Part shown: positions 11,060 to 56,765 of the stretch, in pieces
Layout: each line of letters begins with the position of its first letter
Position numbering within the stretch: position 1 is the first letter of the stretch
Source: Octopus sinensis
Lineage: Eukaryota
Length of the DNA: 64,000 bases
Assembly (NCBI RefSeq): GCF_006345805.1
Contig: NC_043000.1
Location: forward strand, 32,798,001 to 32,862,000
Direction: 5' to 3'
Made by a program: the position numbers and the translations under genes
The notes under the pieces: generated by a model
The model's database searches: none
What the model was told of the DNA's origin: nothing
Seen by the model: only the letters and a program-made list of their open reading frames with translations

Positions 11060-11440
11060 TGTTTCAGTCCATTGCTTTGTTGTGCTGGTGGCATGTAAAA
11101 GCACCAACCGATCGTGACCATTGCCAGCCTGCCCTGGCACCTGTGCCGGTGGCACTTAAAAAGCACCATCCGTATGTGGCCAATGCCAGCGCCGCCTTGA
11201 CTGGCTTCCGTGCTGGTGGCATGTAAAAAGCACCAACCGATCGTGGCCGTTGCCAGCCTCACCTGGCACGTAAAAAGCACCCACTACACTCACAGAGTGG
11301 TTGGCGTTAGGAAGGGCATCCAGCTGTAGAAACACTGCCAGATCAGACTGGAGCCTGGTGCAGCCATCTGGTTCGCCAGTCCTCAGTCAAAATCGTCCAA
11401 CCCATGCTAGCATGGAAAACGGACGTTAAACGATGATGAT
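11060..11440 (+). mobile_element. 5'-truncated RTE LINE 3' UTR copy
   Basis: About 60-bp repeat units followed by the conserved GGAAGGGCATCCAGCTGTAGAAA...GGACGTTAAACGATGATGAT tail, which recurs many times in the window. Confidence 0.8.
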
Positions 11441-12403: not shown

Positions 12404-12706
12404 CCGAGCGTGGCCGTCTGCCAGCCTCGTCTGGCACCTGTGTCGGTGGCACATAAAAACACCATCCGAGCGTGGCCGTCTGCCAGCCTCGTCTGGCACC
12501 TGTGTCGGTGGCACATAAAAACACCATCCGAGCGTGGCCGTCTGCCAGCCTCGTCTGGCACCTGTGTCGGTGGCACATAAAAACACCATCCGAGCGTGGC
12601 CGTTCGCCAGCCTCGTCTGGCACCTGTGTCGGTGGCACATAAAAACACCATCCGAGCGTGGCCGTTCGCCAGCCTCGTCTGGCACCTGTGTCGGTGGCAC
12701 ATAAAA
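12404..12706 (+). repeat. 62-bp minisatellite (5 units) within an RTE 3' UTR copy extending to about 12870
   Basis: Units start at 12404, 12466, 12528, 12590 and 12652, are near-identical and have no spacers. Confidence 0.95.
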
Positions 12707-13439
12707 TCACCCACTACACTCTCGGAGTGGTTGGCGTTAGGAAGGGCATCCAGCTGTAGAAACACTGCCAGATCTGACTGGCCTGGTGCAGCCTTCGGGC
12801 TCCCCAGACCCCAGTTGAACCGTCCAACCCATGCTAGCATGGAAAGCGGACGTTAAACGACGATGATGATTATTATTATTGTGATTGTTATTATTATTAT
12901 TGAGTGAGAGAGAAGGGCATGCCATCAAAGTGACATTGGGGTAAAGTATATGAAGCCCAGTATACCCATCGTGACTACCCGTCTAATTAAGGTACACCAA
13001 GCACATGCATCACGACCATATGTGTGTGATATGATGAACTCATATCAAGATTAACAGCACATGACTTTGCAGGTGGAGCCCAGTGAGAATTTTCTTCAGT
13101 TTGAGTAGCCCATCTCACTCAAAAGGTCCCTGAATAAGGGTTGTTTAAGGACGATGAACAAAACACCCATGTTTCCAGAGGTGAATTATTCAAAGCCCAA
13201 AGAATCCCTCTCAACACATGGCTATGATGCTCCCCTACTACTTCTGCTCATGTTCAGAGATGCACATATCATCAGCCACAAAAGGACACGCTCAACCAGT
13301 TACGGTCATGATTAATGTATGTCATGTCATGATTCATATACTGTTCACTTTCCTGACATTTATACATAAGTTTGTGTACTGTACATGCACTTCTAATTAG
13401 TTGTGGTGCACCTGAGTACTATACACAAGAATTTCATTA

Positions 13440-23673: not shown

Positions 23674-23829
23674 TCAGTTAATGGTTTTTTGTATCCAGTT
23701 TAAATAATATCGTACATCTGTGTAGACACCAGGGGAATGAGGTCTGGAACATCCCATTCCATAAGAGACAATACCAGTCAGTACCCAACGATTGTTTGAT
23801 GGGCATATCAAGGGTCCTCCAGAATCTCC
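23674..23829 (-). CDS. S1A serine protease, coding exon 7 (last; catalytic Ser195)
   Basis: Acceptor TTTTTTTCAG, phase 0. Encodes [51 protein letters not shown] (156 nt). Confidence 0.95.
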
Positions 23830-28198: not shown

Positions 28199-28338
28199 AC
28201 CACAAGAGTCTTTGCCACCATTAATGTAGCCACCACACAACATGCCGGCACTGAATCCAAAAGCATATTTTTCACACATTGTATTGTTCCATATTGGAAT
28301 TCTGACTTTATGGAGGTATCTCTGGACATTACCAGCTT
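28199..28338 (-). CDS. S1A serine protease, coding exon 6
   Basis: CTCTCTCAG acceptor (phase 1) and GTAAGT donor (phase 0). Encodes (E)AGNVQRYLHKVRIP...MLCGGYINGGKDSCG. Confidence 0.95.
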
Positions 28339-29390: not shown

Positions 29391-29528
29391 CTGCATCTTT
29401 TCCCCATCCAGTAACGAAACAGTTTTCAGTGTTTGAGAGGGGAAATTCCATGACAGGGAGACACACTGGATTGATGCATGTCGACAGCAAGATTTTTTCC
29501 GACAGAGTTAGAACTGCAATGTCACTGA
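29391..29528 (-). CDS. S1A serine protease, coding exon 5 (catalytic Asp102)
   Basis: TTTCAG acceptor and GTGAG donor, phase 1-1. Encodes (V)SDIAVLTLSEKILLSTCINPVCLP...CFVTGWGKDA. Confidence 0.93.
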
Positions 29529-32104: not shown

Positions 32105-32229
32105 CTATATGATACTGGCGGTCCTTATAGGAGGGGTTGATTTTCACTGCTGATACATAGACCCTTCTTATAAACTCTTTGTCGTTTGTTCCCAGTGACA
32201 CAAATATTTCACCTGGTTGTCTGTTCTCT
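32105..32229 (-). CDS. S1A serine protease, coding exon 4
   Basis: GTCTCAG acceptor (phase 2) and GTAAGT donor (phase 1). Encodes (V)ENRQPGEIFVSLGTNDKEFIRRVYVSAVKINPSYKDRQYHI and bridges the His57 and Asp102 exons in frame. Confidence 0.88.
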
Positions 32230-37640: not shown

Positions 37641-38461
37641 GTACTTTTATTATTATTATTATATTATTATTATTATAATCATCATCATTGTTATTATTCA
37701 TGTACACAAACAAATTCATATCCTACGAAACAGTGGTTCCCAACCTGTGGTCCATGAACCCCTGGTGGTCTGCAAAGGTAGTACTGAGGGTCCATGAGCA
37801 TGTTAAGCTGACAGACCTTTCAATATCCTGGGGTCCGTGGGAAAACTCATTTAAATAAAAGGGATCCTTGGTAGTGAAAAGGTTGGGACCTACAGTTCTA
37901 GAGCTTAAGTTATTTATTTTCTAAATGAAGTTAATCTATTTTAATTATTTTGGGAAGTGACTGCTCAATCAGCTTTTAGGGTTCATTCAATGGGTTGGTA
38001 ATCATGAATACTTATAAGGCAATGAGCTGGCAGAATCGTTAGCACACTGGGTAAAATGCTTAGCAGTATTTCGTCTCCTGTTACATTCTGAGTTCAAATT
38101 CCACCGAGGTCAACTTTGCCTTTCATCTTTTCAGGGTCAATAAATTAAGTACCAGTCAAGTACTGGGGTTGATCTAATTGACTGCCCCCTCCACCAAAAT
38201 TTCGGGCCTTGTGCCTAGAGTAGAAAAGCCTCCTGAATACTTATAAACTACTGCATTGTTCTAAATGCTCAAAACTGTCGGCTGGTGGATTCTGTGAAAC
38301 TCTGAGTAACATTTTTTGCAAAGTCTTTCCAGCTTCAAGAGTATTATTGTTTTACACAGGTGTGCTCACACGTGTGTGTGTGTGCATAGGTATGGTGATG
38401 TAAACCGAAAAGTAGAATTCAAAACAAGAGCATATGTATTTATTATTATTATTATTATTGT

Positions 38462-38874: not shown

Positions 38875-39058
38875 ACACAATGGGCAGCTGTAATTATATG
38901 CCGGTTATCAATTAAAGATCCTCCACATATTTGATTCCTACTTTTGATAAAAGCCATCCATGGAAATTCACAGTCTTTTGCTTCTCTTCCTCCAATTATG
39001 TACGCCATAATGTTGGATGAGAAATTTGGACTTTCTCTTCTGATCCCACATATTTTGT
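38875..39058 (-). CDS. S1A serine protease, coding exon 3 (activation site and catalytic His57)
   Basis: TTCTTCAACAG acceptor (phase 1) and GTAAGT donor (phase 2). Encodes (Y)KICGIRRESPNFSSNIMAYIIGGREAKDCEFPWMAFIKSRNQICGGSLIDNRHIITAAHC. Confidence 0.95.
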
Positions 39059-39654
39059 CTGTTGAAGAATAAAGATGGCGAATAAGTTGTCTTTGTTAGA
39101 TTCAAGGGGATCTAAATCTATGGAACTGATGTTGTTTATCTCAAAGTCAACAGAGAAAAAAAGGAAGAGAACAGAAGATTGGCTAAAGATGATTTCTTGT
39201 AACTCTCAAAGAAGAACAGAAAACTAAAATATAACATAAATCAATACAGAACATTTCGCATCAGTTCTTCAATATGACAATCAAAGGTTTTTAAGCAACT
39301 TTCAATGAAATATCCCTGTGGAAAGAATGGTTGTTTTATAATCCAAGCCTTTAGCAAAAAGGACCTTTAACTCTTGCAGAAATCAGAAACCAGTGATAGA
39401 TTGGTTTTGGAATACTACCCACAAATCCTATCAACATTAAATTAGTGTTAGTACAAGATATAGACATAGCTTCTTAGGGGAAGGCATGGCTATAGGGACA
39501 CTTTCCTTTCAACAATTGCCTTCCTGCTCCCAACCTCACCATTGGTCATGATATCCTAAACATCGAGAGATAATGTAGAGCAGCGAGGAAACCCTTTTGT
39601 CTTGTAGGGTACAAAGCAACATCAGTACTGCTAGGATAAAATACCACCAGTACA

Positions 39655-40582
39655 TTCTTAAGGAATGAAGCCAGTATAATCCAATTGATGTGTAATGTCA
39701 GTGTGCATGTATGACAGAGTGTAAGTACCTTGAGAGAAAAGTTGGATCTAAGAAGCATCAGATGTGGTGAGCAAGAGAGACAACTGCACTGGTATGGTCA
39801 TGTGGTGGGAATGGATGAGGATAGCTGTGTAAAAAAGTGTCCACACCCTAGCGGTTGAGGGAACCTGTAGAAGAGGTAGACCCCAGGATAACATGGGATG
39901 AGATGGTGAAGCACAACCTTTGAGCATTAGGCCTCACCGAGGTAATGACTAGTGACCGACACCTTTGGAAATATGCTGTGCTTGAGAAGACCCGGCAAGC
40001 CAAATGAGACCATAACCTGTGGCCTATGCCAGGGGTGTAACCAGCCCACTTATGCACACCTTTCCTTCCTTGGACACTAAACTCTGCTTGCGAAGACCTG
40101 TTGAGGCAAGTGAAATCGAAATCAAATTTGATGACTGGCATCCATGCTAGTGGAGCACTAAGAGCACCATCTGAGCGTGACCATTGCCAGAGCAGCTGAC
40201 TAGCATCTGTGCCAGCGGCATGTAAAAAGCACCATTCGAGTGTGATTGTTACCAGCGTTGCCTCACTGGCACTTGTGCTGGTGGCATGTGAAACAAACAT
40301 TCGAGCAAGGTTGTTGCCAGTGCCACTGGACTGGCTCCTGTGCAGGTGGCATGTAGAAAACACCATTTGAGCATGGCCATTGCCAGTACCGCCTGACTGG
40401 CCCTCGTGCTGGTGGCACGTAAAAGCACCCACTACACTCTCAGAGTGGTTGGCATCCAGCTGTAGAAACTCTGCCAGAACAGATTGGAGCCTGGTGCAGC
40501 CATCTGGTTTGCCAGTCCTCAGTCAAATCGTCCAACCCATGCTAGCATGGAAAGCGGATGTTAAACGATGATGATGATGATG
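39655..40582 (+). mobile_element. RTE LINE 3' end joining the ORF terminus, repeat-containing 3' UTR and (GAT)n tail
   Basis: Shows that the abundant short 'GGACGTTAAACGATGAT' elements in the window are 5'-truncated copies of this LINE. Confidence 0.85.
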
Positions 40583-40919
40583 AATGGCAAAGGAGTAGAA
40601 ATATCCTGAGGTTGAGAAGACTTTAATTTTGATAAACCTTTCAAATCTTGTTGCCCACGAAAGAAGCATGCAACAGACTCTGTGTAGTGGATGATGTTGG
40701 GAAGGGCATCCAGCCATAGAAACCATGTGAAAATAAGACATACATGTGAGGCATGGTTTGTTGGTGCAACTGGGTGGGGTGGGGGGCACTAACTCTGAAT
40801 AACAACTGACCTGGTCTGGGACAAGCCACCTAACCCATACCCGCATGGGAAGTGGAAGTGAAAATTATAATGGTGATGATATATAAACGATGACTTACTT
40901 ATTGGGTTGCCACACTTAC

Positions 40920-41054
40920 ATGCATAACTAATGGCATTGAAGGAGTTGTAGAAGCATAAATAATAGAACTGGTGTTCAGTTTGGTAAATTCTGTAAAAGT
41001 GTTCAGTCAATTGTTTCACAACTGGACAACTTATGGAATCAAAGGCACAGCAAT
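40920..41054 (-). CDS. S1A serine protease, putative coding exon 2 (N-terminal Cys module)
   Basis: Strong pyrimidine tract with TTTTTCAG acceptor and GTAAGT donor, phase 1-1, open frame. Encodes (Y)CCAFDSISCPVVKQLTEHFYRIYQTEHQFYYLCFYNSFNAISYA. It is non-repetitive sequence in a TE-filled intron. Confidence 0.78.
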
Positions 41055-41571
41055 CTGAAAAAGAAGGGAAAAAAATTCTTGTAAACACAAATAATGCATC
41101 ATTTTGCTGTCTGTCGGTCTGCCTGTCTCTCTCTCTATCTCTCTCACTTTTTCTTCTTTGTGAGTGTGTGGTTGAGAAGCTTTGTAAGCATATGGTTCCA
41201 GGTTCTGTCCCACTCCATGGCACCTTGGATAAGAACCTTCTGCTATAGTCCTGGGCCAACTAAAGCCTTGTGAGTGGATTTAGTGGATAGAAATTGAAAG
41301 AAGCCCATCATGTATGTATACACATACATACATTCACATATATATATAGGGAGAGTTTACAAAAAAAAAAACAAAAGACGAAGACAGGTGGTGTACAAAA
41401 CAAACGGATGTATTAGTATAACGCTCAGGAATAGAAAAAGTCTTTTATGTTTTGAACCTACGCTCTTCTACAGAAAGGGACACAGAAAAAAAAACAAGAA
41501 GAGAAACAAGGAGAGAAAAATGTGTGTAGTGGCTACCGATCTATCATGCCGACTGATATATATATATATAT

Positions 41572-41610
<39 letters not shown>

Positions 41611-43279
41611 CATGATGTCTATATCATATTTAAATGTATGTGTAACGGGAACTCGTTGCTTCTTACACTTTTGGGGTGCAACTCAGGTGCAACACAATTT
41701 CCGTTCTTTAATTTCCAGAATCCACCAGTCAAGGAACACGAACGCAACCTTAAAAATATATATATTCTTTATTTTCTTATCCACAGAAAGAAGTAAGGTG
41801 GTATATTGGTATCCACTTGGTTCTGGTGTGGCAAGGCTGAACTTTAACACTTGTAAGAATCTTACAACAAGTTCAGCAGCAAAACAGAGCAGGTCAAATC
41901 TTAGCGTCCAGAGACAGCGGAGAAAATAGGTCTGCTACAATCTCGTATGAAGGCGTTCTCCTACTATCCGTGTCTCTCTGTGTCCTTGTTAAGGGAACGC
42001 TGTCCCTCGCCTATCAGCTAATGCCACATCAGCAATTCCTTCTTCAGTCTTCGCGCATGTCTGAGAGGGCACTTCCCTTCTGCCTTTCCAGAAGGCTCCA
42101 ACCCCGCACACGCACACTGAAGAAGGACGTTCCGCACCCGCACACTGAAAATGACGTTGCGCGCGCGCACTGTTGTATAACGTCACTACATATGCAACGT
42201 ATGAGCGAGCTTGAACCTTGCCATCATGGGATGGTTGTGAATGAACATCATCATTGTTTCTTTCCCATCCATGAAAAACATGTCTGACCATTGGGAAATA
42301 TTACTTTGTTTGGAAACAGGCGATGGTTGGCAGCAGGAAGGGAGTGGGAAAAATCTGCCTCTACGAATTTCATCTGACCTCTGCAAGCATGGAAAAATGG
42401 GCATTAAATGATGATGATGATGATGATGAAGGAGCATAGTCTGAAATGTTGAACTCCATTCTTTTCTCTCTCCTTTCAACGTAATAAAGTACATTGAAAG
42501 GAGGAAGAAAACCTTCACATGTACATATATGAACATACATACATGCATACATACACACACACACAGACATACACTGCTATTCATGTTTGCACACATACAT
42601 ACATATATACTTACATGCATTTATCGGTTATTGCCGTTGTTTACCCTTCCCTTTCAGTGTAGTTTGTTTTACTTCGCCCCCCCCCACCCACCATCACGCC
42701 ATTTTTATATGTACAAAGTTCGAATGATCGCCCGTCCTTCTTTAAACAATAAATCCATCTGCACTAAACAGTGAACAGTAGACAGCCGACAGTCAGGTCA
42801 GGTTTAATTATGTAAGAAACCATTGTTAAGCAGAAAGTAAATAGGATTTATGGCTCGACATAGATCTAGCCTGAAGCTGTCTGCTTCCCTATAATTAGGG
42901 GCCGACACAATGGGTAATAACAATAGTTGGGAGGAGGAAAAGTCATTTTAGATCTTATAGAACGTTTTTTTTTTTTATTGTTCATTGTAATGAATAACAT
43001 CTCTTGCGATATTTTCTTCCTCCACGAAAACATAACGATGTGTTTACACAAATGAGATGGAGGTGTTTACATTCAAGGCAAGGCAAGGCAAAGTCGACCT
43101 CGGCGGAATTTGAACTCAGAACGTAGCGACGGACGAAATACCGCTAAGCATTTCACCCATCATCATTCATCATTGTTCGACCGTGGTCGAGACAATGGAA
43201 TTTACCATGCTACGCCAGACTTCACGGTCCATCATGGCATTACGGAGGTCCTGTTGCTGGATGCCTGTATCCCTGGAGA

Positions 43280-44470
43280 TTACATCAGGGTAGGAGAGTA
43301 AAGACGAATGGGTTCTGTTACCAGCATATAACATAGGCAAATCCAGGGACGATGTGCTGACATTCTATTGTTTTCAGTTTGGCTGTTATTGCAACAATCT
43401 GTATTTGTCTGTAGGAATACAGAAATGGAGAATGTTGTGAAGACAGCAGAAGAACTCTGTTCAACGATACGCGAAATGTTGGAGAAAAAAGAAAAATTTA
43501 ACACCAGTTTGGACAGCAATCTTCGTTGTGGCTAAAGTATGGATGTGATTAAAGATTCATAGCCTCAAATCTATAATCAATTGATTCTGAAACGGTGCGC
43601 TACTGGCTGTAGCGAAGAGCGGTGTGAATATTTAGAAAATGTTATCAAAGCTTTAAAGAAATTTATACAAGCAACAGAGTATCTTGGAATAGAATGTTAT
43701 TCTGTAAGTTAGTTAAGCACAAATGGAAATTGTTGTATGATGCTCGGAAACTAAATAGATGATCACTAGGGGGAAAGGAAGAGGTTTAAGGTGGTGGGAG
43801 AGAAGGAGAGATAGAGAGAGAGAGAGAAAGAGAGATAGTGTATTTACGTATGAGAGAGAGAGGGAAAAGTGGATATTTAAAACTGTTTCCATGACACCAA
43901 AACTTATTGGAAGTGAGAACTAAAAACCAATACTAGGCAAGAGGGAAACCGGTTTCACCTCACTACTGGAGAAACGGAAGGTTTCTTACCAGTGAATTCC
44001 CAACAATATTTTTCTAAGCAGAATTGATAGATATAGCGAAAAAGAAAGAAGTTAAAAGAGGTTTTGCTCAACTTCATTTTTTCGCCTTCTTAACAGAAAT
44101 CTTACCAGGATGTCATTCTCCTCTTTTATTTTAGGTTTTCTCTGTAAGACAACGTAAATCTGAAAAGCTATGGCGAGATTCATACTCAAAAGATAAAAAA
44201 ACCCGAAACTAAAAACCAATGCTTTATCCATTCTACGCTCCACTTTCTTCAGAATTCTCTCCATCCTTCTATCAACTTTTTTGCCATTTTCTCCAGGGCC
44301 TCACCAATCTTGCCATCAACAACGCTTTCATATAATAAACCAGATTGGATTTCGATACAAATGTTGAAGAGAGGATAATCAATCCTCTTTTGTATGAGAA
44401 CCTCACATTGCACACTGCACTTGACAAATAAGTAAAAACACTGCAACAGAGTGTACATGGATTGAATGGA
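43280..44470. mobile_element. Highly decayed L1/Tx1-like ORF2 fragments
   Basis: Plus strand: DDVLTF...EYLGI (RT-like). Minus strand 44050-44460: a C-terminal segment resembling the Tx1 fragment at 54190-54950. Confidence 0.35.
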
Positions 44471-44615
44471 AGAATGGAAGTGAGATTCGGCTCAGAAAAG
44501 TGCAAGGTAGACTTGAAGAGAGGAAAACTAAGAACACTAATATTGTGTGAGATTAAGAAACAAATAGGGAAGCTAACACAGACCTATAAAGTGTTTAGCA
44601 AGACACAGTGTGGTC

Positions 44616-44770
44616 CCGGGCGTCTTAATAGTATTATGGGCCCCTGACAATGCAATGCACTGGGCCTTATAGTATTTATTTATTGACAGTAAGCTACATA
44701 GAACTGGGGCCCCTAAACCAGAGAGGCCCCCACGCAACTGCCAAGTGTGCCCATGCTTTAAGACGATGCT
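44616..44770. mobile_element. Small MITE-like element
   Basis: GGGCGTCTTAA ... TTAAGACG inverted termini with internal GGGCCC motifs. Confidence 0.45.
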
Positions 44771-45684
44771 AGTTTAGTCACTAAATAATGCGTAATACAC
44801 ATATATAAAAAGTTAAAAACGAATCTTACAATCACATTTGATTAATGTTTGAAACAAAGAAGGTAACAGACAAAAAGTAAACCTGTCTCAGTGGAGAAAG
44901 AGGGAGGGAGAAGGTTGTGTTTAACACGAACACAGAGTAGTAGGATGAGGCTAGAAAGCTATTATAAAATATTAATGCATGACTACAAAATTATCTGGTA
45001 AAAAATAACGGACAATTAATATAAATAGCTACAAAATACGAACTTTAAAAAAAAGAAGCTATTTTCTATCTTCAGTAAAACAACGCACATTGTGAAAATA
45101 TAAAGTCTAAGTTTAAAACGAGGCTACAAAGCGATGGTGAGAAAAGCTCTTCCATGACCATCACCTGGAAAAACTGAAGAGGGTAACAATAGGTGTTGGA
45201 AAAGTGCAGTGATGGTTTGAAAAATAAAATATTCAGAGGTGAGACTAGAAGATTCTTGGTTGCAGGACAGGATGAAAGCCTTCACACTCGAAATACCAAA
45301 GATATTTTACTGAGCAGAATATAGGCAATAAGTATATAATATCTAATCGTCCGGTCTTAGCCAAGAAAGAATACGTCTGGAGGAATGGCAGTGTTCGGAC
45401 TTAAACTACTATTCATAACTCTAAAGTCACATGATTTTTAAGTTACTTAGAAATTTAGTTCTGCATTTAAGCATGATATAGTGTAAATGGGTATTTTGTG
45501 AATACTTTGAAATATAAACCTTGTATCTTTATTATCACATTACAACATATGATTTTCCAATTTTCAGTCGCATATCAACACTTCAAAACTATAAAGCCAC
45601 CGACACATTTCCATTTCTTTTCAGATTGTTTCGGAAAATATTCGACTCAATCGTATTCACCGGGATCCAGATTACGTTCCCAGT

Positions 45685-46712
45685 ATGCCTAAAGCTACAA
45701 AGCTTTCCGAAACTGAACAAGGGAAGGTTCTTGCACTGAAAGCGGAAGGAATAAGTAACTGGAAGATTGCCAAGAAGACTCGGCGAAGCAGAACGTCAAT
45801 GGGCAATTTTCTGAAAGATCCTGACGGTTGCATCAAAAAGGGATGAAAGGGCCATTGTCAAAGCTGTGAAGAAGACACGCTGCTTTTCTGTTTTCAAAAT
45901 CAAGACATCAGTAGGAGGAGGAACCTCGACATCCCCCGTAAGAAGAGTGATTTTGATCCATGGTTACAAGGGCTGGTCCTAGGAATTTTTCGAAGGGAGG
46001 GCACAAGGTCAGAAGGGAATACAATCCTAGGAGAAAAGGGCGTGATCCTCAGCTCCCCCTCCCTCTTAGGTCCGTCCCTGGTTACCATCCGAAGAAGCGG
46101 CTATGGCGTCCGCTATCGTCTTCTTCTCACAAAGCTGTTAGATTGGAGTTTGCTCAGCAGCATCAGACGTCGGATGGCGAATGGACCAGGGCTTTGTTTT
46201 CTGATGAGGAAAAATGGAACTCGGATGGCTCCAACGATTATAAGTATTACTGGACAGATAAATGTATACAAAATTCTACTTATTCCAAGTGGGAGAACAG
46301 CAGAGGAGGTCTTATGGTGTGGGGTGCAATATCTGCCAATGGGAAGCTACCACTTGTCATCATGGATGACCGTTTCAATGCTACACAATACATCGACATA
46401 TTCCAATAGGACAATGCTCCAATTCATAAAACAAGGGCAACTTTGGATTTCCTCCATGCAATTGGGGTTGAAGTCACGCCATGGCCAGCAAGAAGTCCCG
46501 ATCTTAATCCTTCAGAAAATTCCTGAGGATATCTCCCGAATGTTGTGTATAGCGAAGGCAAGCAGCATTCACCTGTTGATGAACATCAAACGGCAATAAA
46601 GAAGGCCTGGGAAGCGCTTCCACCCGATCTGCTGCTGAGATTGATTGGGAGTACGAAATCACGTGTCTTTGAAGCAATTCAGAAAGGTGGTGGTCAGACA
46701 CACTATTGTTGA
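45685..46712 (+). pseudogene. Tc3-like (DD34E) transposase pseudogene with a nested 112-bp insertion
   Basis: Translates as MPKATKLSETEQGKVLAL..., LFSDEEKWN, LMVWGAIS, Q*DNAPIH and WPARSPDLNPSEN, with in-frame stops. Confidence 0.85.
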
Positions 46713-48495
46713 TGTATTGCACGAGAATATCATTGAAATATCTCATAACTTCCCTGTTTTGCATCATCTTTCCAACATTATTCAACCTGGTGTTATAGTT
46801 TTGAACAGGGGCTTTCTGGCTGTGTATGTTTTTTCCACTTATCTAATTTATTTTGGATTTCAATAAATTTGAATATTGCAATGCCTTCTTTTATTCCATT
46901 TCCTGTCTAAAGGTGAGTTTCATGAATCTGGGTAGTATAGTTCGCTAGAAGAAAAAAAAAGAAAGAAAAAAAGAAACAGACAGTGCTCTGGCTTTATAGT
47001 TTTGAAGAGCGGTTTACATACATTGGTAGATATAGCAGCAGCAGCATAAATAAAGCTAAGATTTTTCGTGGTGATAATGATGATGATGATAATAATAATA
47101 ATAACCTCCTTATAACAATATAACACAAGAGAATTAATTTAGCAAAGCATGGAAAGTTGGAAGGTTGAGTTAACGTCATGTGGTAAAGCGCTTAGAGAGG
47201 TCAGAATCAAGAAGTGATAAACCAGACGGACCGGGAAACGAGGAAGAAGATGACAATTTATGGAGCTTTACAACCTAAAAGTGACGTGCATAGGATACAC
47301 CTATCACGAGAAGATGGAGGAAGAGCCGTGAGAGGCTGCGAAGATTGCATAAGAAGCGAAGAAAAGTCATGGTTGGTGTATTCGGAACAGTACAGACCCA
47401 TTACTCATGGGAATTAAATTGGCTGGGATCATAGACACAGAGTCTTGCACCAATAAAGAGGAGTTGAAAAGAAGACTACAAGGTTGATAGACAAAGCGAT
47501 GCATGGGAAATTCCTAAGACATATGGATAAAGACACTAATTTTGGAAAGATATACAAACATGAGACATGGGCCTGGATGATGGAAGGAGATTTGAAAAAA
47601 TGAACGGGGCTCTTATTTGTGCTGCTCAAGAGAAAGCATTAAGAACTAACTACATAAAATTCCACATTGATAAAACGATCGAAATCGCCATTGTGCAGAA
47701 TGTTTGGTAATTTTGAAGAAACTCCAAACCACGTTGTATGTGAATGAAGCTCTTTGGCACAGCAGGAATACAAGAGATGGCATGACAATGTTGATGGAAT
47801 TGCACATTGGTGGTTTTTATGTGGGAAATTCAACTTGAATGAGCTGACAAGGCCGCTGGCTGTAATGAAAACTGATGTGGTGAAACTGCAACGGGATTTC
47901 AATGTGCAATGCAACGATGTGATTGAAGCAGGAAGACCTGGTTTGACCCAGATTGAGAAAGAAGAAAGACATTGTTGGATTATTGACGTCGCTCTCACAG
48001 GAGATACCCACGTGGTAGAGAAGGAGAATGGCAAAATGGATAGGCACCAAGATTTAAAGTATGAGTTAGTACGTTTTTGGGAACTGAGGAATATGGAGGT
48101 TATACCTATTGTGAGAGGGGAACTTGGAAGCATGACAAACCAATTTCAGAAGTGGTTTGTCAAACTTGGACTTACTATCAAGACTGAGATGCTGCAGAAA
48201 ACAGAACGACTTAGAAGAGCCAGGATTGTGAGAAGAGTTGAGAGGACCCATGGTCATTACTTATGATGCACACCTGATAAAGAGATATCGAAGTGTGGTA
48301 TAATGCACCTGAAAAGAGGCAAGGTACAGTCGTCCCTAGCAGGGATAGAATTAATTACCTAATAGAGAACTGATTAAACAAGTTGAAAAGGAAGGCTATA
48401 TATGCCTTGGCATACTAGGGTTCAACGAAATCAGGAAGAAGGAAATGAAAGAACAACTGAGGATGGAATCTTTCCGAAGACTGAGGTTGGTGTTG

Positions 48496-48869
48496 AGCTG
48501 TTGAGCGAACTTCTTCGTTCCAGAGCTCGCAAGATGGGAGAAGTCCGAAATGTGGTCCTTTGCTATTCGTAAGACCCGCAGAAGAAAAAGCAGGACAACC
48601 CCCGACACCGAGAGCATCGACGGATGGATGAATGCGCATCCAGGCTCAGCGGTTGCGTAGGAAGTCAGAGACAAGAAACAGGAAGAAAGAGTGAGGGAGA
48701 AAGTTGGGGCAAAAGAGTACAACCGGGGCCGCCACCACACCCTGCCGGAGCCTCGTGGAACTTTTAGGTGTTTTCGCTCAATAAACACACACAACGCCCG
48801 GTCTGGGAATCGAAACCACGATCCTCCGACTGCGAGTCCGCTGCCCTAACCACTGGGCCATTGCACCTT
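48496..48869 (-). mobile_element. tRNA-derived SINE (family B) with 14-bp TSD
   Basis: TGAGGTTGGTGTTG repeated at 48482-48495 and 48870-48883. It interrupts R4 coding sequence (RRLRLVL|RSKL). Confidence 0.9.
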
Positions 48870-49048
48870 TGAGGTTGGTGTTGCGCTCGAAATTGACCGG
48901 ATCAGTTGCCAGGATTGTATCGAAACAGGGAAACAGCTTAGGGTCGTATGTAAAAATACCGTTCAACCATTGTTGAAACGTGTGAAGAAGTCCGGTGTCA
49001 TTAAAGCTGATAACTATATAAAGAAAGAAAAACTGAATGAGGAAAAGA

Positions 49049-49153
<105 letters not shown>

Positions 49154-51959
49154 TAGTATGGAAAGAGAAAAGAATGTAAGGTCAGTTTGCAAGCACCCGT
49201 ACGCCAAGACAAATACAGAAGACCGGTGGATATGGACGAGAAGGAGTGACCTGAAGATAGAGACAGAAGCATTCATATGTGCAGCACAAAAATAAGCATT
49301 AAGGACTAACTATGCGAAGTGCAGAATCGACAACACTACTGACAGCGACAAATGCAGAATGTGCGGTGAGAGAAGTGAAACGGTATGGTACATCGTTAGT
49401 GAATGCCCGAAATTGGCACAACGCGAATACAAAAGATGCCATGACAATGTGGCAAGAATGATCCATTAGGAGTTCTGTAGAATTACGGCTTACAAAGAGC
49501 AAACCCGAGAAAGTCACCGAAAATGAAAACTGCAAAATCTTGAGGGATGCAATGATTCAGTGAGACCATCTGATCAGACATAAGAAACCGGACATTGTTG
49601 TGGTGAATGAAAAAGAAAGAACCTCTGTTATTTGTTATGGCCTTGGTCCAACTTTCTGTAGTCCTACGTAAAATCAACGTGCATTATGAACTGAGAAAGA
49701 ATGAACCTTGTCTCAACCATCTCCTCTTCATGGATGATTTAAAACTGTTCACAAAAACAGAGCCTGAAATGGAGAGGCTGGTTGAGACTGTGCAAATGTG
49801 CAAATGTGCAGCAAGGATATAGGGATGGAATTCGGTATCTCAAAGTGTGCGGTGCTTACTTTGAAGCGGGGGGGGGAGTAAATTGTAGGGGCATAGAATT
49901 GCCAAATGGAGAGAGAGTGGAAGACTCGGATGATTATGGGTACAAGTACCTTGAGATCCTGGAGCCGGACAATATCTGGCACAGAGAAATGAAAGACAAT
50001 GTGACCACTATTTATTTCAAGCGACTTAAACTTCTCTTGAAATCGAAGCTCAACTCAAGGAACCTATAGTCCGCTATAGTGCACTCATCCTGAGATGGAT
50101 ACAAGCGGAGATTGACCGACTCAATCACACTACCCGAAAGACGATGACAATGAATGGTGCCCTCCACTCTAAGGTAAATGTACATAGGCTGTACATGAAA
50201 AGATGTAAAGGTGGACGTGGGATGATTAGCGTACTGGAGTGCATCAACAGTGAAAAAAGAAACGTGGCAGAATATTTGGTAAACAGCAAAGAAGACCTGC
50301 TACAGTATGCTGCTAGTGCAGAAGGAGTTAACAAAAATGGACTTGAGAGTGGTCATGAATTCCGAACAAGAACGAAAGAGAAAAAACGCTATTCCGTATG
50401 GAATTGCATCCATGATCAGTTCCACCGTAAAACCGATAAATTAAAAGACCAGAAAGCATCATGGAGGTGGCTCAACAAGGGTGACCTAAAAAAGAATATT
50501 GAAAGCTTAATCGTCGCTGCTCAGGACCAGGCATTGAATACCAATTCAGTCAAAAAGAATATATATCACATAAGTGCGTCGGACCTCTGCAGAATGTGTG
50601 GGAAGAAGGTCGAAAGAAGGGAAAGCAAAAATCCTCTGGGACTTTGATTTTCATACTGGCTAAGTGTTAGAGCACCAAAGGCCGGATATAGTAACCTTTA
50701 GGAGGGACAAACAAGAATGCCTATCAATCGACATAACAGTGCCAGGAGATCAACATATCATCATGAAAGAAAGAGAAAAAGTTGATAAATATGGAGACCT
50801 GAGAATTGGGATGGCTAAGATGTGGCAGCTACGAGAGTTGAACATAAAGGTTATCCCTATTTTCATCGGAGCATTGGGTTCAATACCACCCCTAAATCTG
50901 AAAAAAAAAGCATCTGAAAACCTTAGAAATACCCTACATTCTAGACGTACTGCAAAAGTCGGCCTTACTTGGAACTGGACGTATATTGCGTAATGTACTG
51001 TTTGTCTGAGGTCCTTGTTGAGACTTGACAAATAGCACAAACCCCCGGTAGACACAATAGCTTCAATCAACAACCTCACGATATTATGTACTGTGTGACA
51101 TCTATAATAATAATAAGCATGGAAGGAAAAATGTACGGTTAGTTTGCATGAGATATGAATCCCAAGACAGATACAGAGGATCGGTGGTTATGGATGAGGA
51201 GGAGTGACCTGAAGATAGAGACAGAAACACTCATATGCGCAGCTCAGGAACAAGCGTTAAAGACCAATTATATGAAGTGCAGAATTGACAACACTACCGA
51301 TAGCTACAAATGCAGAATGTGTGGTGAGAAGGATGAAACAGTATGGCACATCGTTAGCGAATGCCCGAATTGGCATCAAGCGAATACTAGAGACGACACG
51401 ACGATGTAGCAAGAATGATCGTTTCGTGTACCCGTGGAAATTACGGCCTACAAGGAGCAAATACGTGGTATGAGTAAATCCCAGAAGGAGTCACCGAAAA
51501 TGAGAATTGCAAAATCCTGTGGGATGTAATGATCTTGTGTGATCATCCGACCAGACATCGGAAACCGGACATTGTTGTGGTGAATAAAAAAGAAAGAACA
51601 TGCACGATAATCAGCATAGCATGCCCCAGTAACAGCAGGATCAATGTGAAAAAAAAAGAATAAATAAACATTTATGACGATTTGAAGCGGGAAATACGAA
51701 GGTTGTGGTCAGTGAAGAGAGTAGACGTGATACCAATAGTAATTGGTGCACTTGGAAATATCAGCACTCAACTATCAACATGGCTGAAAAAGATTGGTGC
51801 AAGTGTGAAGGTAGAATACCTACAAAAATCAGCACTGCTTGGAACCGCAAGAATTCTTCGCAGGGTTCTTGAAGCATGACCAATAAACAAGTGTCACCTT
51901 AGTCTACTGGCTATGGACAGCGGACACTTTCCATCATAACCAGCAAAATAAGCTGTGAG

Positions 51960-51961
<2 letters not shown>

Positions 51962-52018
<57 letters not shown>

Positions 52019-52030
52019 TAATAATAATAA
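51962..52030. repeat. (TAA)n microsatellite
   Basis: Direct reading. It follows an R4 3' end. Confidence 0.95.
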
Positions 52031-54097
52031 ATCTCTGAACGAGGTATAAACTAACTGCACGACAATGTGAAGTATATTTGCCATCTAAATGTGGCTAACC
52101 ACTAAGGGTGGATGTTACTGTAGCTTGTAGCCCCAGGAGAACATCTTCTCCAGCTGGCTATTGACTCACTTTCTGTGCCCTATCGGTATGTGCAAAGGGA
52201 AGCCGTCCTTCCCATCGTCGACCTGACGTGATAAGCACGAACCGGGTTTCTGGATATTTACCCGTCATTAGCGCACGACAATCACCCGTCTTCGATGCGA
52301 AGGGGTCCCAATACAAATACATATATCCTTTTTCCAGTGACTTTTCGTCACTGATCTCGAAAAAGTGTAAACAAGCAATAATAAATCTCTGAAAGAGGTA
52401 TAAACAGTAACTGGAGCCAACTTGTACAAATGTAAAGCAAAAGTCAAACATAAAATAATAATAATAATAATCGTAAATAGACTGTATATGGAAAGAAAGA
52501 ATGATGGCAGAGGACTAATTAGTATAGACCATTGTATAAGGAGTGAAAGGAGAACGCTTGCCGAGTATTTGATAAATAGTGATGAAGACCTGCTGCAATA
52601 TGCCACGAAAGATATGGGTGTAAATGCAGATGAAAAGATGGGCAAGGAAGAATCAAACCAAAGAGCTGAGGGGAAGAGAAAAGAAGGCCTTCTTGAAATG
52701 AGAATGCACGGACATTTTGAAAGGAGTACACAAGACGTTAAGGATAATACAGCATCGTGGGCATAGCTTGAACGAGGTGATTTGAAGCGTACCACCGAAA
52801 GCCTGGTCATTGCTGCACAAGACCAGGCTCTCGCTACAGATTCAGTGAAGTGTAACATCTATAAAACTTCTGACACCCAGAAAGCCGACCCCGTGGAAAG
52901 AGTGTGGAAAATGTGACCCGCTTGGTGGGCCCCACCTGCAAGGTCATGTGCTGTTTATCTTGATATGAGATCACCATGTCGCGCACATATGGCTGTGATG
53001 CATGTGCCTAGTGTACCTTTATCAGACGGGTAGTCATGATGGGTATACTGGGCTTTGTATATTTTACCCCAGTGTCACTTTGATGGTATGGACTGCTCTC
53101 TCGCTCAATAATAATAATGAGCAAGTATAAAGATCTTGAAATAGAAATTAGCAAAATGTGGAACCTGAAGACTAAAACAATACCTATTGTCATAGGTGCC
53201 CTGGGAATGATAACAAAAGGGGCTGATTGCTACCTAGCTCAGATACCAGGAAGCCCCAAAATGGCAGAAATTCAAAAGATAGTGCTCGTGGGAACTGCCC
53301 ATATCCTACGTAAAATACTTTCTATGTAATCTCAAGTTTAAAAATAAACACATAATTTTCTTATGGTTTCTTGAACATTCCCTAGAACAACACTATGTAC
53401 AAAACCAAATATATGGCACCCTAGGCATAACACCAACATGAACTTCCAACTTGTTGTCTTTTAAGGTCTCTGGGTGAGACTTGGAGCCAACTTGTACAAA
53501 TGTAAAACATAAGTCAAACATAGAATAATAATAATAATAATGATGATGATGATGATAATAATCTTTTCTACTCTAGAGATATGGCCTGAAGTTTCAGGAG
53601 AGTGTTAACTAACATTGATCCTTTTTGCTTAACTGGTATTTATTTTATCGATCCCGTAAGGATGAAAAGCAAAGTCGATCTCGGTGTGCTAACGATTTTG
53701 TCATCTCACTGCCTTAATAATAAGGATGATGACGATGATGATGATGGTAATGGTGGTGGTCGTGATGATGATGATGATGATAGACGACGATGGTGATGGT
53801 GGTGGTGATGATGATGATGATCTCTTATTTTAATAATGATAATAATAACATCTAGCGGGGTGAAGTGGGGGCATTATAAGAGCCATTTACAATTTAAGAG
53901 GAATTGGAGAAATGAAAGTAGAAGAGGGAATGAAATGAGACAATAGACATGGAAGCTGTAGACCGATTGATTCAGGAATACTCTGACCACTAACAGCATA
54001 AGTTCTCGGCCAGATTTTCTTCACCAATTTACAAGCGAACTATTTTTCTTCGCCTCAACCGTTTTTTCCACAGTCACCCACCTTTTGATTGATTCAC

Positions 54098-54101
<4 letters not shown>

Positions 54102-54161
<60 letters not shown>

Positions 54162-54182
54162 GGAGAGAGAGAGGGAGAGAGA
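54102..54182. repeat. (GA)n microsatellite
   Basis: Direct reading. Confidence 0.95.
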
Positions 54183-54189
54183 GCACTTC

Positions 54190-54950
54190 CCTCTCCACTC
54201 TCGTTTTCTTTTCCGAGTAGGACTTGAAAAAGTCGACGGAGGCTTGACCGGGGGTTCGTATCAGCCCGCAATCCTTTCAGCTTCGCCTATGGCACAACTT
54301 CTTTTGGCACATCCACGCGAAAGAGGAGCACTTCATGCTCTGCCTTTTTTGCCTTTTTTAAAGGCAGATGCTTGAGTGATCCTCACGATGGACTCGTCCA
54401 GCAGTCGGGTTCGTCCAAAACGTAATGACAGTTATTTGACATAAGCCACAACTCAGCAAAGTTCGAGTACTGCACAAGCGCATCATGCACGGTTTCATTG
54501 ATCTGCGAGCACCTCAGATAGTCTCGGTTGGCAGCACTTCCATGGCCATTGAGTTAATCTCGAATTACAGAAGCTCTGCCAGGCCAAGGATTTCTGGAAG
54601 CAATCCCCAGCCCGAAAGTTCTCCAAAACAGATTATCTAATTTGACTTCGTCGTTGTGTAAAGTTTCCTGGAGAACTTAGTCGTTTTTTTTTACTTACCA
54701 TGGTATCTCTATGTGGTTAAACTAGAATTTCTACTGACAGCGTTGGCCGACTGGTAAAGGGGAGAGGGGGAGCCCCTGACGATATTCCAAGTGCCAAATG
54801 ACTAACCCTGGTCTTTTCTTAATCCAAGTCTGCAGTTCTCTCAAAGAGATGAGCTGCGGAAAAACGCATCTAACAAACCGAGACCACATCTGTTCACTAT
54901 CCAGGAAAATCTATGAAAAGATATAAAATGTGACCACTCCGTCTGTTTTT
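54190..54950 (-). mobile_element. L1/Tx1-clade ORF2 C-terminal fragment
   Basis: Minus-strand remnants EQMWSRFVR, RCSQINETVHDALVQYSNFAELW (degenerate CCHC knuckle), GRTRLLDESIVRI and KEVV.*AKLKGLR. Confidence 0.6.
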
Positions 54951-55541
54951 TTTTTTAGAAAAAGCCTTTCAACCGTGCCCATCCTGTCTTTTCAAAAACG
55001 TTCCGTGACCAGCATGCGTTTCAAACGGCAGCACCCATTTTTACTATTAAGTCTTTATGCAGTGGCATTCCGGGCTGCATCGATTATATAATGAGATCGA
55101 GTGAATCACCAATACCCCTATCACACATCAAACAGGCAAACTTATAATCAATAATGATTGATAACGGTGTCTTTGACTGGCACAAGGGCATCGAAGGAGG
55201 AAGACTACTCAGACGCAAAGCCAAAACGTTTTAATGTGTGTGGAGATTGGGGTGGGGGAAAGAATGCAAAAAAAAAAAAAACATAACAGGATTATAAATA
55301 TAACAAGTAAAATAATAAATAATTAAAATATAAAATGCATAATAATATTGTAAAAGGGGACAGTAAAATAGGACAAAAAAAGAGGCCCGCGCAAACCCAA
55401 CGTTTACACCTCAACACAGACAATAGGGGGGCCACGTGTACGGTAGATCTAGAGCAATAGACTTATGGGTCTAAGACAATAATTTATTGGACTGATGGAA
55501 TCGGTGGAGCATTGGAGAAAATGACTTGTGGTATTTAGTTA

Positions 55542-55771
55542 GGCGGTGAGCTGGCAGAAACGTTAGCACGCCGGGCGAAATGCTTAGCGGTATTCCGTCT
55601 GCGTTACGTTGTGAGTTCAAATTTCGCCGAGGTCGACATTGCCTTTCATCCTTTCGGGGTCGATAAATTAAGTACCAGTTACGCACTGGGGTCGATATAA
55701 TCGACTTAATACCTATGTCTGTCCTTGTTTGTCCCCTCTGTGTTTAGCCCCTTGTGGGTAATAAAGAAATA
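55542..55771 (+). mobile_element. tRNA-derived SINE (family C), full length with TSD
   Basis: GGTATTTAGTTAGG at 55530-55543 and 55772-55785. Head GGCGGTGAGCTGGCAGAA...GAGTTCAAAT. Many older copies occur at about 20425-22900, 26450-27200, 32300-32960 and 38020-38230. Confidence 0.9.
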
Positions 55772-56073
55772 GGTATTTAGTTAGGATTACGATCTGAGAT
55801 CGAATTCCGCGGGACCGGGAAACTCCAATAGCAATAATTTATTGCGATAAAGTATCGTAGAAATGAATGGAATTATAGCAGAAGATTAAGAAGAATGCAG
55901 AGATAATCCGTGTATAAACGATATATGAGAGCTGAGACGTACATCTTCGCTAATCACACCACTTCCACCCGTCTTTGATAAAAATTAAACGAACTGAAGA
56001 CTAAGATAAATAAATTAATTAATTAATAAATAGATAGACAGATAGATAAATAAATAAATCAAAGGAGACTTAC

Positions 56074-56233
56074 ATCTCGAAGAAATTGCGTTGACAAACG
56101 TTGATGAATTCCGACAGATAGTATTGCTGTTTAAGTAGAAACTATTGAGGACGTTTTGAAAATCCACCCCGCCCGCACATTCTGGACTTACTTCAACAAC
56201 TAACAAAGCCAGTGAAAATATCAACATTAACAT
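56074..56233 (-). CDS. S1A serine protease, putative first coding exon (signal peptide)
   Basis: ATG followed by hydrophobic MLMLIFSLALLVVEVSP, open to a phase-1 GTAAGT donor that is compatible with exon 2 or exon 3. Confidence 0.75.
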
Positions 56234-56359: not shown

Positions 56360-56460
56360 TGCTCTCTCTCTCTCTCTCTCTCTCTCAACCTTCTCCCTCT
56401 TTTCTATATTATTTACTTCCTCACAACATATCTATCTATCTATCTATCCATCCATCCATC

Positions 56461-56543
<83 letters not shown>

Positions 56544-56605
56544 GTGTCTTTCGCTCTGTCTTTCTGTGTGTGTGTCTGTCTGTTTTCTCTGTCTGTCTGT
56601 CTGTA

Positions 56606-56682
<77 letters not shown>

Positions 56683-56705
56683 GTCTCTGTCTGTCTGTCT
56701 TTCTG

Positions 56706-56760
<55 letters not shown>

Positions 56761-56765
56761 CTATG
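56360..56765. repeat. Compound microsatellite (CT)n/(TATC)n/(TCTG)n
   Basis: Direct reading. About 20 uninterrupted TATC units at 56461-56542. Confidence 0.95.

What the first reader, a model, noticed from the sequence alone, without database searches (positions are those of the whole stretch)
38875..56233. Hidden 7-exon secreted protease with an unassigned six-cysteine N-terminal module
Seen: joining exons 56233-56074, 41054-40920, 39058-38875, 32229-32105, 29528-29391, 28338-28199 and 23829-23674 gives a 345-aa ORF with canonical, phase-matched splice sites. The roughly 80 residues between the signal peptide and the linker Cys102 carry C19-x20-C40-x14-C55C56-x6-C63-x23-C87. Established: common S1A accessory domains (clip with its terminal CC, kringle, LDLa, CUB, SRCR, apple, EGF) have different Cys spacing. 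Inference: this may be a lineage-specific disulfide-bonded pro-domain or binding module on a secreted digestive, salivary or venom-type protease. S1 peptidases are known cephalopod salivary-gland products, but tissue cannot be read from DNA.
Basis: partly seen in the sequence, partly recalled or inferred. Interest (0 to 1): 0.75.

Follow-up and report, generated by a model that had tools for sequence, protein, structure and literature searches.

The report
Annotated octopus protease with orphan eight-cysteine module
The seven-exon gene is real but already annotated (Octopus sinensis "venom protease"): an ordinary secreted trypsin-family enzyme whose roughly 88-residue N-terminal part has eight cysteines, not six, and matched no known domain in any search run here.

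Summary
One junction is wrong. Exon 2 ends 21 nt further on, at 40899 rather than 40920. The corrected 352-aa product is 100% identical to RefSeq XP_029635916.1 (Octopus sinensis). O. bimaculoides and Argonauta hians share the same seven-exon layout, with a 156-nt exon 2.

The extra seven residues add a conserved Cys-x-Cys. The module therefore has eight cysteines (19, 40, 55, 56, 63, 87, 99, 101) plus linker Cys109.

The C-terminal part is a standard S1A protease:
- It has an intact catalytic triad.
- Asp at chymotrypsin position 189 predicts trypsin-like specificity.
- The activation site is Tyr125|Ile126, so the enzyme probably cannot activate itself.

The module has no Pfam, PDB or fold match. 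An exhaustive phmmer search of 1.84 billion cluster representatives found only its own octopod cluster. It is under purifying selection (dN/dS 0.23). AlphaFold2 predicts helices at low confidence, so the fold is unknown.

Verdict: this is a known gene and an ordinary mosaic protease carrying an octopod-restricted orphan module. "Hidden" and "six-cysteine" are wrong. "Unassigned module" holds. A venom or digestive role was not tested.

The parts
56074..56233 (-). Exon 1 (160 nt). It holds the start codon, a hydrophobic signal-like N-terminus (residues 1-17, MLMLIFSLALLVVEVSP) and module residues 18-53, including Cys19, Cys40 and the sequon N42-S-S.
   Evidence: The sequence is identical to the start of XP_029635916.1. 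Argonauta has an equivalent signal-like start, and its exon 1 lies only 1.4 kb from exon 2.
40899..41054 (-). It encodes module residues 54-105 with Cys55, 56, 63, 87, 99 and 101.
   Evidence: The 156-nt length and the A|GTAAGTC donor are conserved in O. bimaculoides and A. hians.
40899..40919 (-).
   Evidence: The Cys-x-Cys is conserved in Argonauta as CDC.
38875..39058 (-). Exon 3 (184 nt). It holds linker Cys109 (KICG), the activation site Tyr125|Ile126-Ile-Gly-Gly, Cys135, Cys150, and catalytic His165 with Cys166 (TAAHC).
32105..32229 (-). Exon 4 (125 nt), protease residues about 167-208.
29391..29528 (-). Exon 5 (138 nt). It holds catalytic Asp211 (DIAVL), Cys226, Cys231 (the equivalent of chymotrypsinogen Cys122) and Cys245.
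28199..28338 (-). Exon 6 (140 nt). It holds Cys276, Cys289, Asp298 (the equivalent of Asp189 in the S1 pocket) and Cys300.
23674..23829 (-). Exon 7 (156 nt including the stop codon). It holds Asp303-Ser304 (GDSGGP, the catalytic serine), Cys310 and Cys328.

Best explanation
The interval holds the first three exons of an already annotated single-copy octopod gene (O. sinensis XP_029635916.1, 352 aa, seven exons, 23674-56233 on the minus strand). It encodes a secreted mosaic S1A serine-protease zymogen.

Shown by the sequence and tool results:
- The N-terminus is signal-like.
- An 88-residue module rich in aromatic residues and Asn/Ser follows. It has eight conserved cysteines and one conserved N-glycosylation sequon.
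- Next come a linker cysteine (Cys109), an IIGG activation N-terminus preceded by Tyr, and a complete catalytic domain.
- The catalytic domain has His165/Asp211/Ser304, and Asp298 at the base of the S1 pocket.

Inferred:
- The eight module cysteines form four internal disulfides in a mainly helical fold.
- Cys109 bonds to Cys231, as Cys1-Cys122 does in chymotrypsinogen. The module would then stay tethered to the active enzyme after cleavage.
- Cys135-Cys226 is an extra intradomain bond found here only in mollusc sequences.
- The enzyme cleaves after Arg/Lys but is activated after Tyr125. It would therefore need a different, chymotrypsin-like upstream protease, which means it works as one step in an extracellular proteolytic relay.
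- The tethered module most likely targets or regulates the enzyme by binding a substrate, cofactor or matrix. In that respect it would be analogous to clip, Gla-EGF or kringle modules, but it is not homologous to them.
For: - Gene identity and structure.
- S1A membership: Pfam Trypsin E = 3.2e-56. The closest solved relatives are plasma kallikrein, TMPRSS13, enteropeptidase and plasmin, at E about 1e-45 to 1e-43, and all match residues 119/126-350 only. The invariant columns H165, D211, D298, D303, S304 and the canonical cysteines appear in a 20-sequence alignment.
- The module is real and constrained. All nine N-terminal cysteines and 51 of 108 positions are invariant between Octopus and Argonauta. 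dN/dS between O. sinensis and O. bimaculoides is 0.23 for the module and 0.43 for the protease.
- The eight-cysteine count: Cys135 and Cys226 are present together in 14 of 14 sequences that have either, all of them mollusc. Seven of those are gastropod sequences with no Cys-x-Cys within 30 residues upstream. These two cysteines therefore pair with each other and not with Cys99/Cys101.
- The module is an orphan.
- A helical prediction came from two independent AlphaFold2 runs.
- A P1 Tyr also occurs in several other lophotrochozoan homologues.
Against: - The module's fold is not established. AlphaFold2 confidence is poor: pLDDT 42-63 in the full model and a mean of 54 with pTM 0.43 for the module alone.
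- Disulfide connectivity is inferred from counting and co-occurrence, not from coordinates.
- No expression, secretion or activity data could be reached. The octopod protein clusters contain genome-derived entries only.
- The orphan status rests on annotated proteins. Cephalopod genomes without gene models were not searchable.
- The dN/dS values rest on only 7 amino-acid differences in 88 codons.
Confidence: 0.6

Rival explanations
1. The N-terminal 88 residues are a disposable pro-region, acting as a folding chaperone or zymogen inhibitor that is released or degraded after activation, rather than a tethered recognition module.
For: No binding-domain homology was found. The linker between Cys109 and the cleavage site evolves fast, with 20% identity between Octopus and Argonauta. 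Structure confidence is low.
Against: The C-G linker cysteine is invariant across all 20 aligned S1A proteins, as is its partner Cys231. That is the arrangement which keeps N-terminal chains attached in chymotrypsin-type zymogens. Eight conserved cysteines and a dN/dS of 0.23 are more constraint than a throw-away peptide usually shows.
Confidence: 0.2
2. It is a salivary-gland (venom) or digestive protease, as the reader suggested and as the public name 'venom protease' implies.
For: Serine proteases dominate posterior-salivary-gland expression in non-TTX octopods (PMC7656900, read). The protein is secreted-type and has trypsin-like specificity.
Against: - Per that paper, the salivary-gland proteases belong to a cephalopod-specific clade with gene-family expansions. 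This gene has no paralogue in the 64-kb window.
- One gene per species carries the module.
- Its nearest non-orthologous relatives by percent identity among the 120 listed hits are gastropod proteins that share the extra Cys135-Cys226 pair, not other cephalopod proteases.
- No transcript-derived copy sits in its protein cluster.
- The need for an upstream activator suggests a regulated cascade more than bulk digestion.
Confidence: 0.15
3. The module is not a lineage-specific invention. It is a highly diverged elaboration of the short four-cysteine segment found N-terminal to the related gastropod proteases, or of some other known helical disulfide-rich fold.
For: Gastropod relatives from Physella, Biomphalaria and Patella share the Cys135-Cys226 pair. 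They also have a four-cysteine N-terminal segment followed by a Ser/Thr-rich linker and C-G. A short motif is shared: CAGGVDF / CENGVDF against CQGAYDF / CQNGLNF.
Against: Profile-profile comparison gives 1% probability over 7 columns. There was no Pfam, PDB or Foldseek support.
Confidence: 0.25
4. The model is a chimaera, with exons 1-2 belonging to another transcript and joined to a plain trypsin gene by chance.
For: Intron 1 is 15 kb long and full of transposon remnants. Alternative annotated starts exist.
Against: The same seven exons, with the same lengths for exons 2 and 4-7, occur in three species from two octopod superfamilies. In Argonauta, exon 1 is only 1.4 kb from exon 2. The 352-aa O. 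sinensis and O. vulgaris gene models in the public records both join these exons. The cysteine count is even only for the whole joined protein.
Confidence: 0.02

Closest known systems
XP_029635916.1 'venom protease' (Octopus sinensis), with orthologues XP_014770024.2 (O. bimaculoides), CAI9721871.1 (O. vulgaris) and GAB1606624.1 (Argonauta hians)
   Same: The corrected window product is 100% identical to XP_029635916.1. The O. bimaculoides orthologue is 352 aa with the same exon lengths. Argonauta is 58-59% identical, and all 20 O. sinensis cysteines are invariant in the alignment with it.
   Different: Nothing differs at protein level for the O. sinensis entry. None of the database entries assigns a domain to residues 18-105; the only precomputed Pfam domain is PF00089.
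Chymotrypsin-type two-chain S1A zymogens with N-terminal modules tethered by the Cys1-Cys122 bond (plasma kallikrein, plasmin, enteropeptidase, TMPRSS family)
   Same: The catalytic domain matches at E about 1e-45 to 1e-43. The C-G linker cysteine and its partner are invariant. The activation N-terminus is I-I-G-G, and Asp189, Gly216 and Gly226 indicate trypsin-like specificity.
   Different: The N-terminal part matches none of their apple, kringle, SEA, LDLa, CUB or SRCR modules. There is no transmembrane anchor. P1 of the activation site is Tyr, not Arg/Lys. It also has an extra Cys135-Cys226 pair.
Gastropod S1A proteases P0042/P0044 (Bulinus), P0048 (Physella), P0067 (Biomphalaria) and P0045/P0057/P0095 (Patella)
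   Same: These are among the most identical non-orthologous hits to the catalytic domain, at 36-44% identity. They are the only other sequences with both Cys135 and Cys226. Several have a cysteine-containing N-terminal segment before the C-G linker.
   Different: Where seen in full (P0045, P0048, P0057, P0067), their N-terminal segment has about four cysteines. It is followed by a long Ser/Thr-rich linker and shows no significant similarity to the octopod module. Their P1 residue is Lys or Arg.
Arthropod clip-domain serine proteases
   Same: The logic is the same: a secreted zymogen with a disulfide-rich N-terminal module tethered to the catalytic chain, activated by an upstream protease in a cascade.
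   Different: There is no CLIP (PF12032) match. The octopod module has eight cysteines in a different spacing and is predicted to be all-helical.

Membership tests
Peptidase family S1A (chymotrypsin/trypsin fold, Pfam PF00089) | Match to the Trypsin profile above the curated threshold, across the whole domain | tested here: met
   191.1 bits against a cut-off of 20.6, E = 3.2e-56, profile positions 1-220 of 220.
Peptidase family S1A (chymotrypsin/trypsin fold, Pfam PF00089) | Catalytic triad His57/Asp102/Ser195 in the TAAHC, DIxL and GDSGGP contexts | tested here: met
   H165 (TAAHC), D211 (DIAVL) and S304 (GDSGGP) are all invariant columns in a 20-sequence alignment.
Peptidase family S1A (chymotrypsin/trypsin fold, Pfam PF00089) | Zymogen activation N-terminus (I/V-I/V-G-G) and Asp194 for the salt bridge | tested here: met
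   I126-I-G-G and D303 are present. The P1 residue is Tyr125, which is also Tyr in O. bimaculoides and Argonauta.
Peptidase family S1A (chymotrypsin/trypsin fold, Pfam PF00089) | Proteolytic activity | not testable with these tools
   This needs expression and an enzyme assay.
Type II transmembrane serine proteases (the O. vulgaris record is named 'Transmembrane protease serine 6') | N-terminal cytoplasmic tail with a signal-anchor helix, and a stem of SEA, LDLa, CUB or SRCR domains | tested here: not met
   The 352-aa product starts directly with a roughly 12-residue hydrophobic run and has no cytoplasmic segment. No stem-domain Pfam hits appear at E <= 10.
Clip-domain serine proteases | A CLIP domain (PF12032; by my own recollection, six cysteines forming three disulfides) N-terminal to the protease | tested here: not met
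   There is no hit at E <= 10 for three orthologues. The module has eight cysteines in a different spacing.
Cephalopod posterior-salivary-gland (venom) S1 protease clade | Membership of the cephalopod-specific expanded clade, with multiple paralogues | tested here: inconclusive
   There is no paralogue in the window and one module-bearing gene per species. The most identical non-orthologous hits listed are gastropod. No tree including the published salivary-gland sequences could be built.
Cephalopod posterior-salivary-gland (venom) S1 protease clade | Expression in the posterior salivary gland, or presence in saliva | not testable with these tools
   No read or expression data were available. 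Literature searches by accession found nothing.
Known disulfide-rich accessory domains in Pfam (kringle, apple/PAN, EGF, LDLa, CUB, SRCR, frizzled, saposin, PLA2, insect OBP, plant 8-Cys motif) | Profile match of residues 18-125 | tested here: not met
   Zero Pfam families at E <= 10 for the O. sinensis, O. bimaculoides and Argonauta sequences. The PDB profile search gave a best E of 0.78. Foldseek gave a best E of 6 on a low-confidence model.

The most novel reading that the evidence does not exclude
Residues 18-105 are a new disulfide-stabilised helical fold restricted to octopods. It would serve as the recognition module of a protease that sits inside an extracellular activation cascade, being cleaved after Tyr by a chymotrypsin-like upstream enzyme and itself cleaving after Arg/Lys. 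That would make it an independently evolved molluscan counterpart of arthropod clip-domain or vertebrate coagulation-type proteases.
Probability: 0.25. Interest if true: 0.45.

Novelty: new variant of a known kind. Interest (0 to 1): 0.25.

Why it matters
The practical value is a correction. The gene is not hidden, and the exon 2 boundary and the cysteine count in the first-stage note are both wrong.

What remains is a well-defined, conserved, single-copy octopod protein domain with no detectable relatives and no confident predicted fold, attached to a standard protease. If the module proves to be a new fold that directs a protease cascade, it would add to the short list of independently evolved targeting modules of S1A proteases. 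It would also give an entry point into molluscan extracellular proteolytic signalling, which is poorly known. If it is only a diverged pro-region, the locus is ordinary.

Tried and rejected
1. Cys99/Cys101 bond to the two extra protease cysteines, which would leave a six-cysteine module. Rejected. Cys135 and Cys226 occur together in all 14 sequences that have either. Seven of these are gastropod proteins with only one cysteine within 30 residues upstream of the activation site. Insect proteins with C-x-C-x-C-G lack both cysteines.

2. The module is an internal duplication, suggested by C-x20-C-x14-CC against C-x23-C-x11-CxC and by FVNAIS against FNAIS. Rejected as unsupported. The local alignment score between the two halves is reached by 49-84% of 5000 shuffles in all three species.

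3. The module is homologous to the gastropod four-cysteine N-terminal segment. Not supported: hhalign gives 1% probability over 7 columns.

4. Word-index homologue searches with the module, as a single sequence and as a 3-sequence profile, found nothing. These are weak negatives, because the single-sequence search did not even recover the module's own cluster. The exhaustive phmmer search is the one to rely on.

5. Two AlphaFold2 runs gave low-confidence helices for the module. Foldseek of the module model against PDB gave only E = 6 hits.

6. Literature searches by accession numbers and by topic found no paper on this gene.

7. A tblastn search for paralogues in the window found none.
Full report
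**Observation**

Every intron starts with GT and ends with AG, and the phases are consistent. tblastn of the product against the window finds exactly these seven pieces and no second copy. Residues 119-340 match Pfam Trypsin (PF00089) end to end at E = 3.2e-56. This is a real gene, not a chance ORF.

**Identity of the gene**

A homology search returned an O. vulgaris protein (96% identity over 98% of the query by BLASTP) and an Argonauta hians protein (58% identity over 97% of the query) as the top hits. The 90% cluster of the first also holds XP_029635916.1 'venom protease' from O. sinensis, XP_014770024.2 'serine protease 33' from O. bimaculoides, and three O. vulgaris isoforms.

In the window, exon 2 is followed by two GTAAGT sites 21 nt apart.

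With the second donor (exon 2 = 41054-40899) the product is 352 aa and letter-for-letter identical to XP_029635916.1. The window is therefore O. sinensis or something indistinguishable from it at this protein, and the gene is already in RefSeq.

I fetched the O. bimaculoides and A. hians loci and rebuilt their exon structures:
- O. sinensis (corrected): 160/156/184/125/138/140/156 nt.
- O. bimaculoides: identical to O. sinensis.
- A. hians: 184/156/187/125/138/140/156 nt.

The downstream A|GTAAGTC is conserved in all three. Minor use of the upstream donor in O. sinensis cannot be excluded without reads.

**Anatomy of the protein (corrected numbering)**

- Residues 1-17 are a short hydrophobic, signal-like N-terminus (MLMLIFSLALLVVEVSP). 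Argonauta has an equivalent one.
- Residues 18-105 are the module. It has 88 residues, 18% of them Phe or Tyr, with 9 Asn and 10 Ser and a pI near 6.9. Cysteines sit at 19, 40, 55, 56, 63, 87, 99 and 101. The sequon N42-S-S is conserved as N-S-T and N-T-T.
- Cys109 lies in K-I-C-G. Both this C-G and Cys231 are invariant columns in a 20-sequence alignment of diverse S1A proteins. By established knowledge of chymotrypsinogen, this corresponds to the Cys1-Cys122 bond that keeps the N-terminal chain attached after activation.
- The activation site is Tyr125|Ile126-Ile-Gly-Gly, and the Tyr is conserved in all three species.
- The catalytic residues are His165, Asp211 and Ser304, with Asp303. Asp298 sits six residues before the serine at chymotrypsin position 189 and predicts Arg/Lys specificity.
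- The closest solved structures by sequence are plasma kallikrein, TMPRSS13, enteropeptidase, plasmin and TMPRSS6. All align only from residue 119/126 onwards.

**How many cysteines belong to the module**

The protease domain has three cysteines beyond the four canonical pairs: 135, 226 and 231. I mapped positions 135, 226 and 231 in all protease domains among 125 retrieved proteins, including both domains of two-domain proteins.

- Cys135 and Cys226 are either both present (14 sequences) or both absent, and never occur singly.
- The 14 are the seven octopod entries plus seven gastropod proteins from Patella, Physella, Biomphalaria and Bulinus.
- Those gastropod proteins have only one cysteine in the 30 residues upstream of the activation site.
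- Insect homologues with a C-x-C-x-C-G linker have neither cysteine.

Cys135-Cys226 is therefore an intradomain pair seen here only in molluscs. Cys99 and Cys101 belong to the module, which has eight cysteines, presumably forming four disulfides. That connectivity is an inference from counting, not from coordinates.

**Is the module a known domain?**

- Pfam gave no family at E <= 10 for the O. sinensis, O. bimaculoides or Argonauta module.
- PDB sequence search found nothing, and the profile search had a best E of 0.78.
- An exhaustive phmmer search of 1.84 billion 50%-identity representatives found one hit, the module's own cluster.
- The word-index searches found nothing. They are weak evidence, because the first did not even recover the module's own cluster.
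- AlphaFold2 predicted four or five helices in both runs, but with poor confidence: pLDDT 42-63 within the full-length model, and a mean of 54 with pTM 0.43 for the module alone with a three-sequence alignment.
- Foldseek of the module model against PDB gave nothing better than E = 6.

The module is unassigned. Its fold is unknown and probably helical.

**Is the module functional?**

- All nine N-terminal cysteines and 51 of 108 positions are invariant between Octopus and Argonauta.
- Between O. sinensis and O. bimaculoides, dN/dS is 0.23 for the module and 0.43 for the protease domain. The counts are small, with 7 replacements in 88 codons.
- The stretch between Cys109 and the cleavage site is only 20% identical between Octopus and Argonauta, which is typical of a linker.

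**Mechanism (inference)**

This is a secreted zymogen whose module stays disulfide-tethered after cleavage at Tyr125|Ile126. The enzyme's own pocket is trypsin-like, so it should not cleave after Tyr. Activation therefore needs another protease with chymotrypsin-like specificity, which suggests a relay rather than bulk digestion.

The module most plausibly targets or regulates the enzyme. The rival readings are a disposable pro-region, a venom or digestive enzyme, and a diverged version of the gastropod N-terminal segment. They are listed with their tests in the Rival explanations section.

**Venom question**

The literature describes the salivary-gland proteases as a cephalopod-specific clade with gene-family expansions (PMC7656900). 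Several points argue against this gene being a typical member of that expansion:
- It has no paralogue in the window.
- One gene per species carries the module.
- Among the 120 hits listed, the non-orthologous ones with the highest identity are gastropod proteins.
- Its cluster has no transcript-derived members.

These are weak arguments, and tissue expression remains untested.

**Ideas that failed**

- An internal duplication of the module is not significant.
- Homology to the gastropod four-cysteine segment is not supported.
- No paper mentions the accessions.

**Verdict**

This is an already annotated, ordinary mosaic S1A protease gene. The first-stage model is nearly right, but it is off by 21 nt at one donor, and that error changes the cysteine count from six to eight. 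The one point of interest is a conserved, octopod-restricted orphan module of unknown fold.

Noticed in passing
window 949-3075 (+): A single uninterrupted 708-codon ORF matches Metallophos, the TMEM62 Ig-like domain and the TMEM62 C-terminal domain (E 1e-7 to 5e-11). It is a TMEM62-like gene lying about 20 kb beyond the 3' end of the protease gene, on the opposite strand, so the two genes converge. It appears to be intronless here.
   Followed up: partly
window 56200-56201 (-), inside exon 1: An internal acceptor (..ctttgttAG|TTGTTGAAG) explains O. vulgaris isoform CAI9721870.1. In that isoform an alternative first coding exon, 18,061 bp upstream of the main ATG and so outside this window, replaces the signal peptide with MSRINSGGGGGKVVEML. 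The product would not be secreted, and it may be an annotation artefact.
   Followed up: partly
window 29391 (-), exon 5 donor: O. vulgaris isoform CAI9721872.1 (275 aa) reads through this donor (..KDAG ELHYIY..), which is intron retention. The product lacks the catalytic serine and would be inactive.
   Followed up: no
window 61968-62261 (-): A stretch 5.7 kb upstream of exon 1 is 78% identical at protein level to the N-terminal extension of the superseded O. bimaculoides model XP_014770024.1 (494 aa). It has no Pfam match. It may be a conserved upstream exon or a transposon remnant.
   Followed up: partly
window 35572-37719 (-), 45960-46599 (+), 47754-48266 (+), 50144-50647 (+): Introns 1 and 3 contain decayed mobile-element ORFs. 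One is a reverse-transcriptase fragment (RVT_1, E = 6e-9, at 36050-36553). Another is a weak Tc1/mariner-like transposase remnant (E about 0.005, at 45960-46409).
   Followed up: partly
window 11082-11269, 12403-12711, 33741-33955, 40163-40429: Arrays of a 62-67-bp tandem unit whose consensus sequences look alike by eye (..GGTGGCATGTAAAAAGCACC..) occur on both strands. One array has 5 copies at 98% identity. Another lies in intron 2, directly beside exon 2. They were not aligned to each other, but they are probably a dispersed satellite-like or SINE-derived repeat.
   Followed up: no
window 56429-56764: A (TATC)n microsatellite of about 84 units starts roughly 200 bp upstream of the start codon, in the presumed promoter region. 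A (GA)n run lies between it and the ATG.
   Followed up: no
proteins P0045, P0048, P0057, P0067, P0042, P0044, P0095 (gastropods) and the window protein: An extra cysteine pair, at roughly chymotrypsin positions 25 and 117, co-occurs strictly (14 of 14). Among the 125 proteins retrieved it appears only in mollusc S1A proteases. It may mark a molluscan subfamily.
   Followed up: partly
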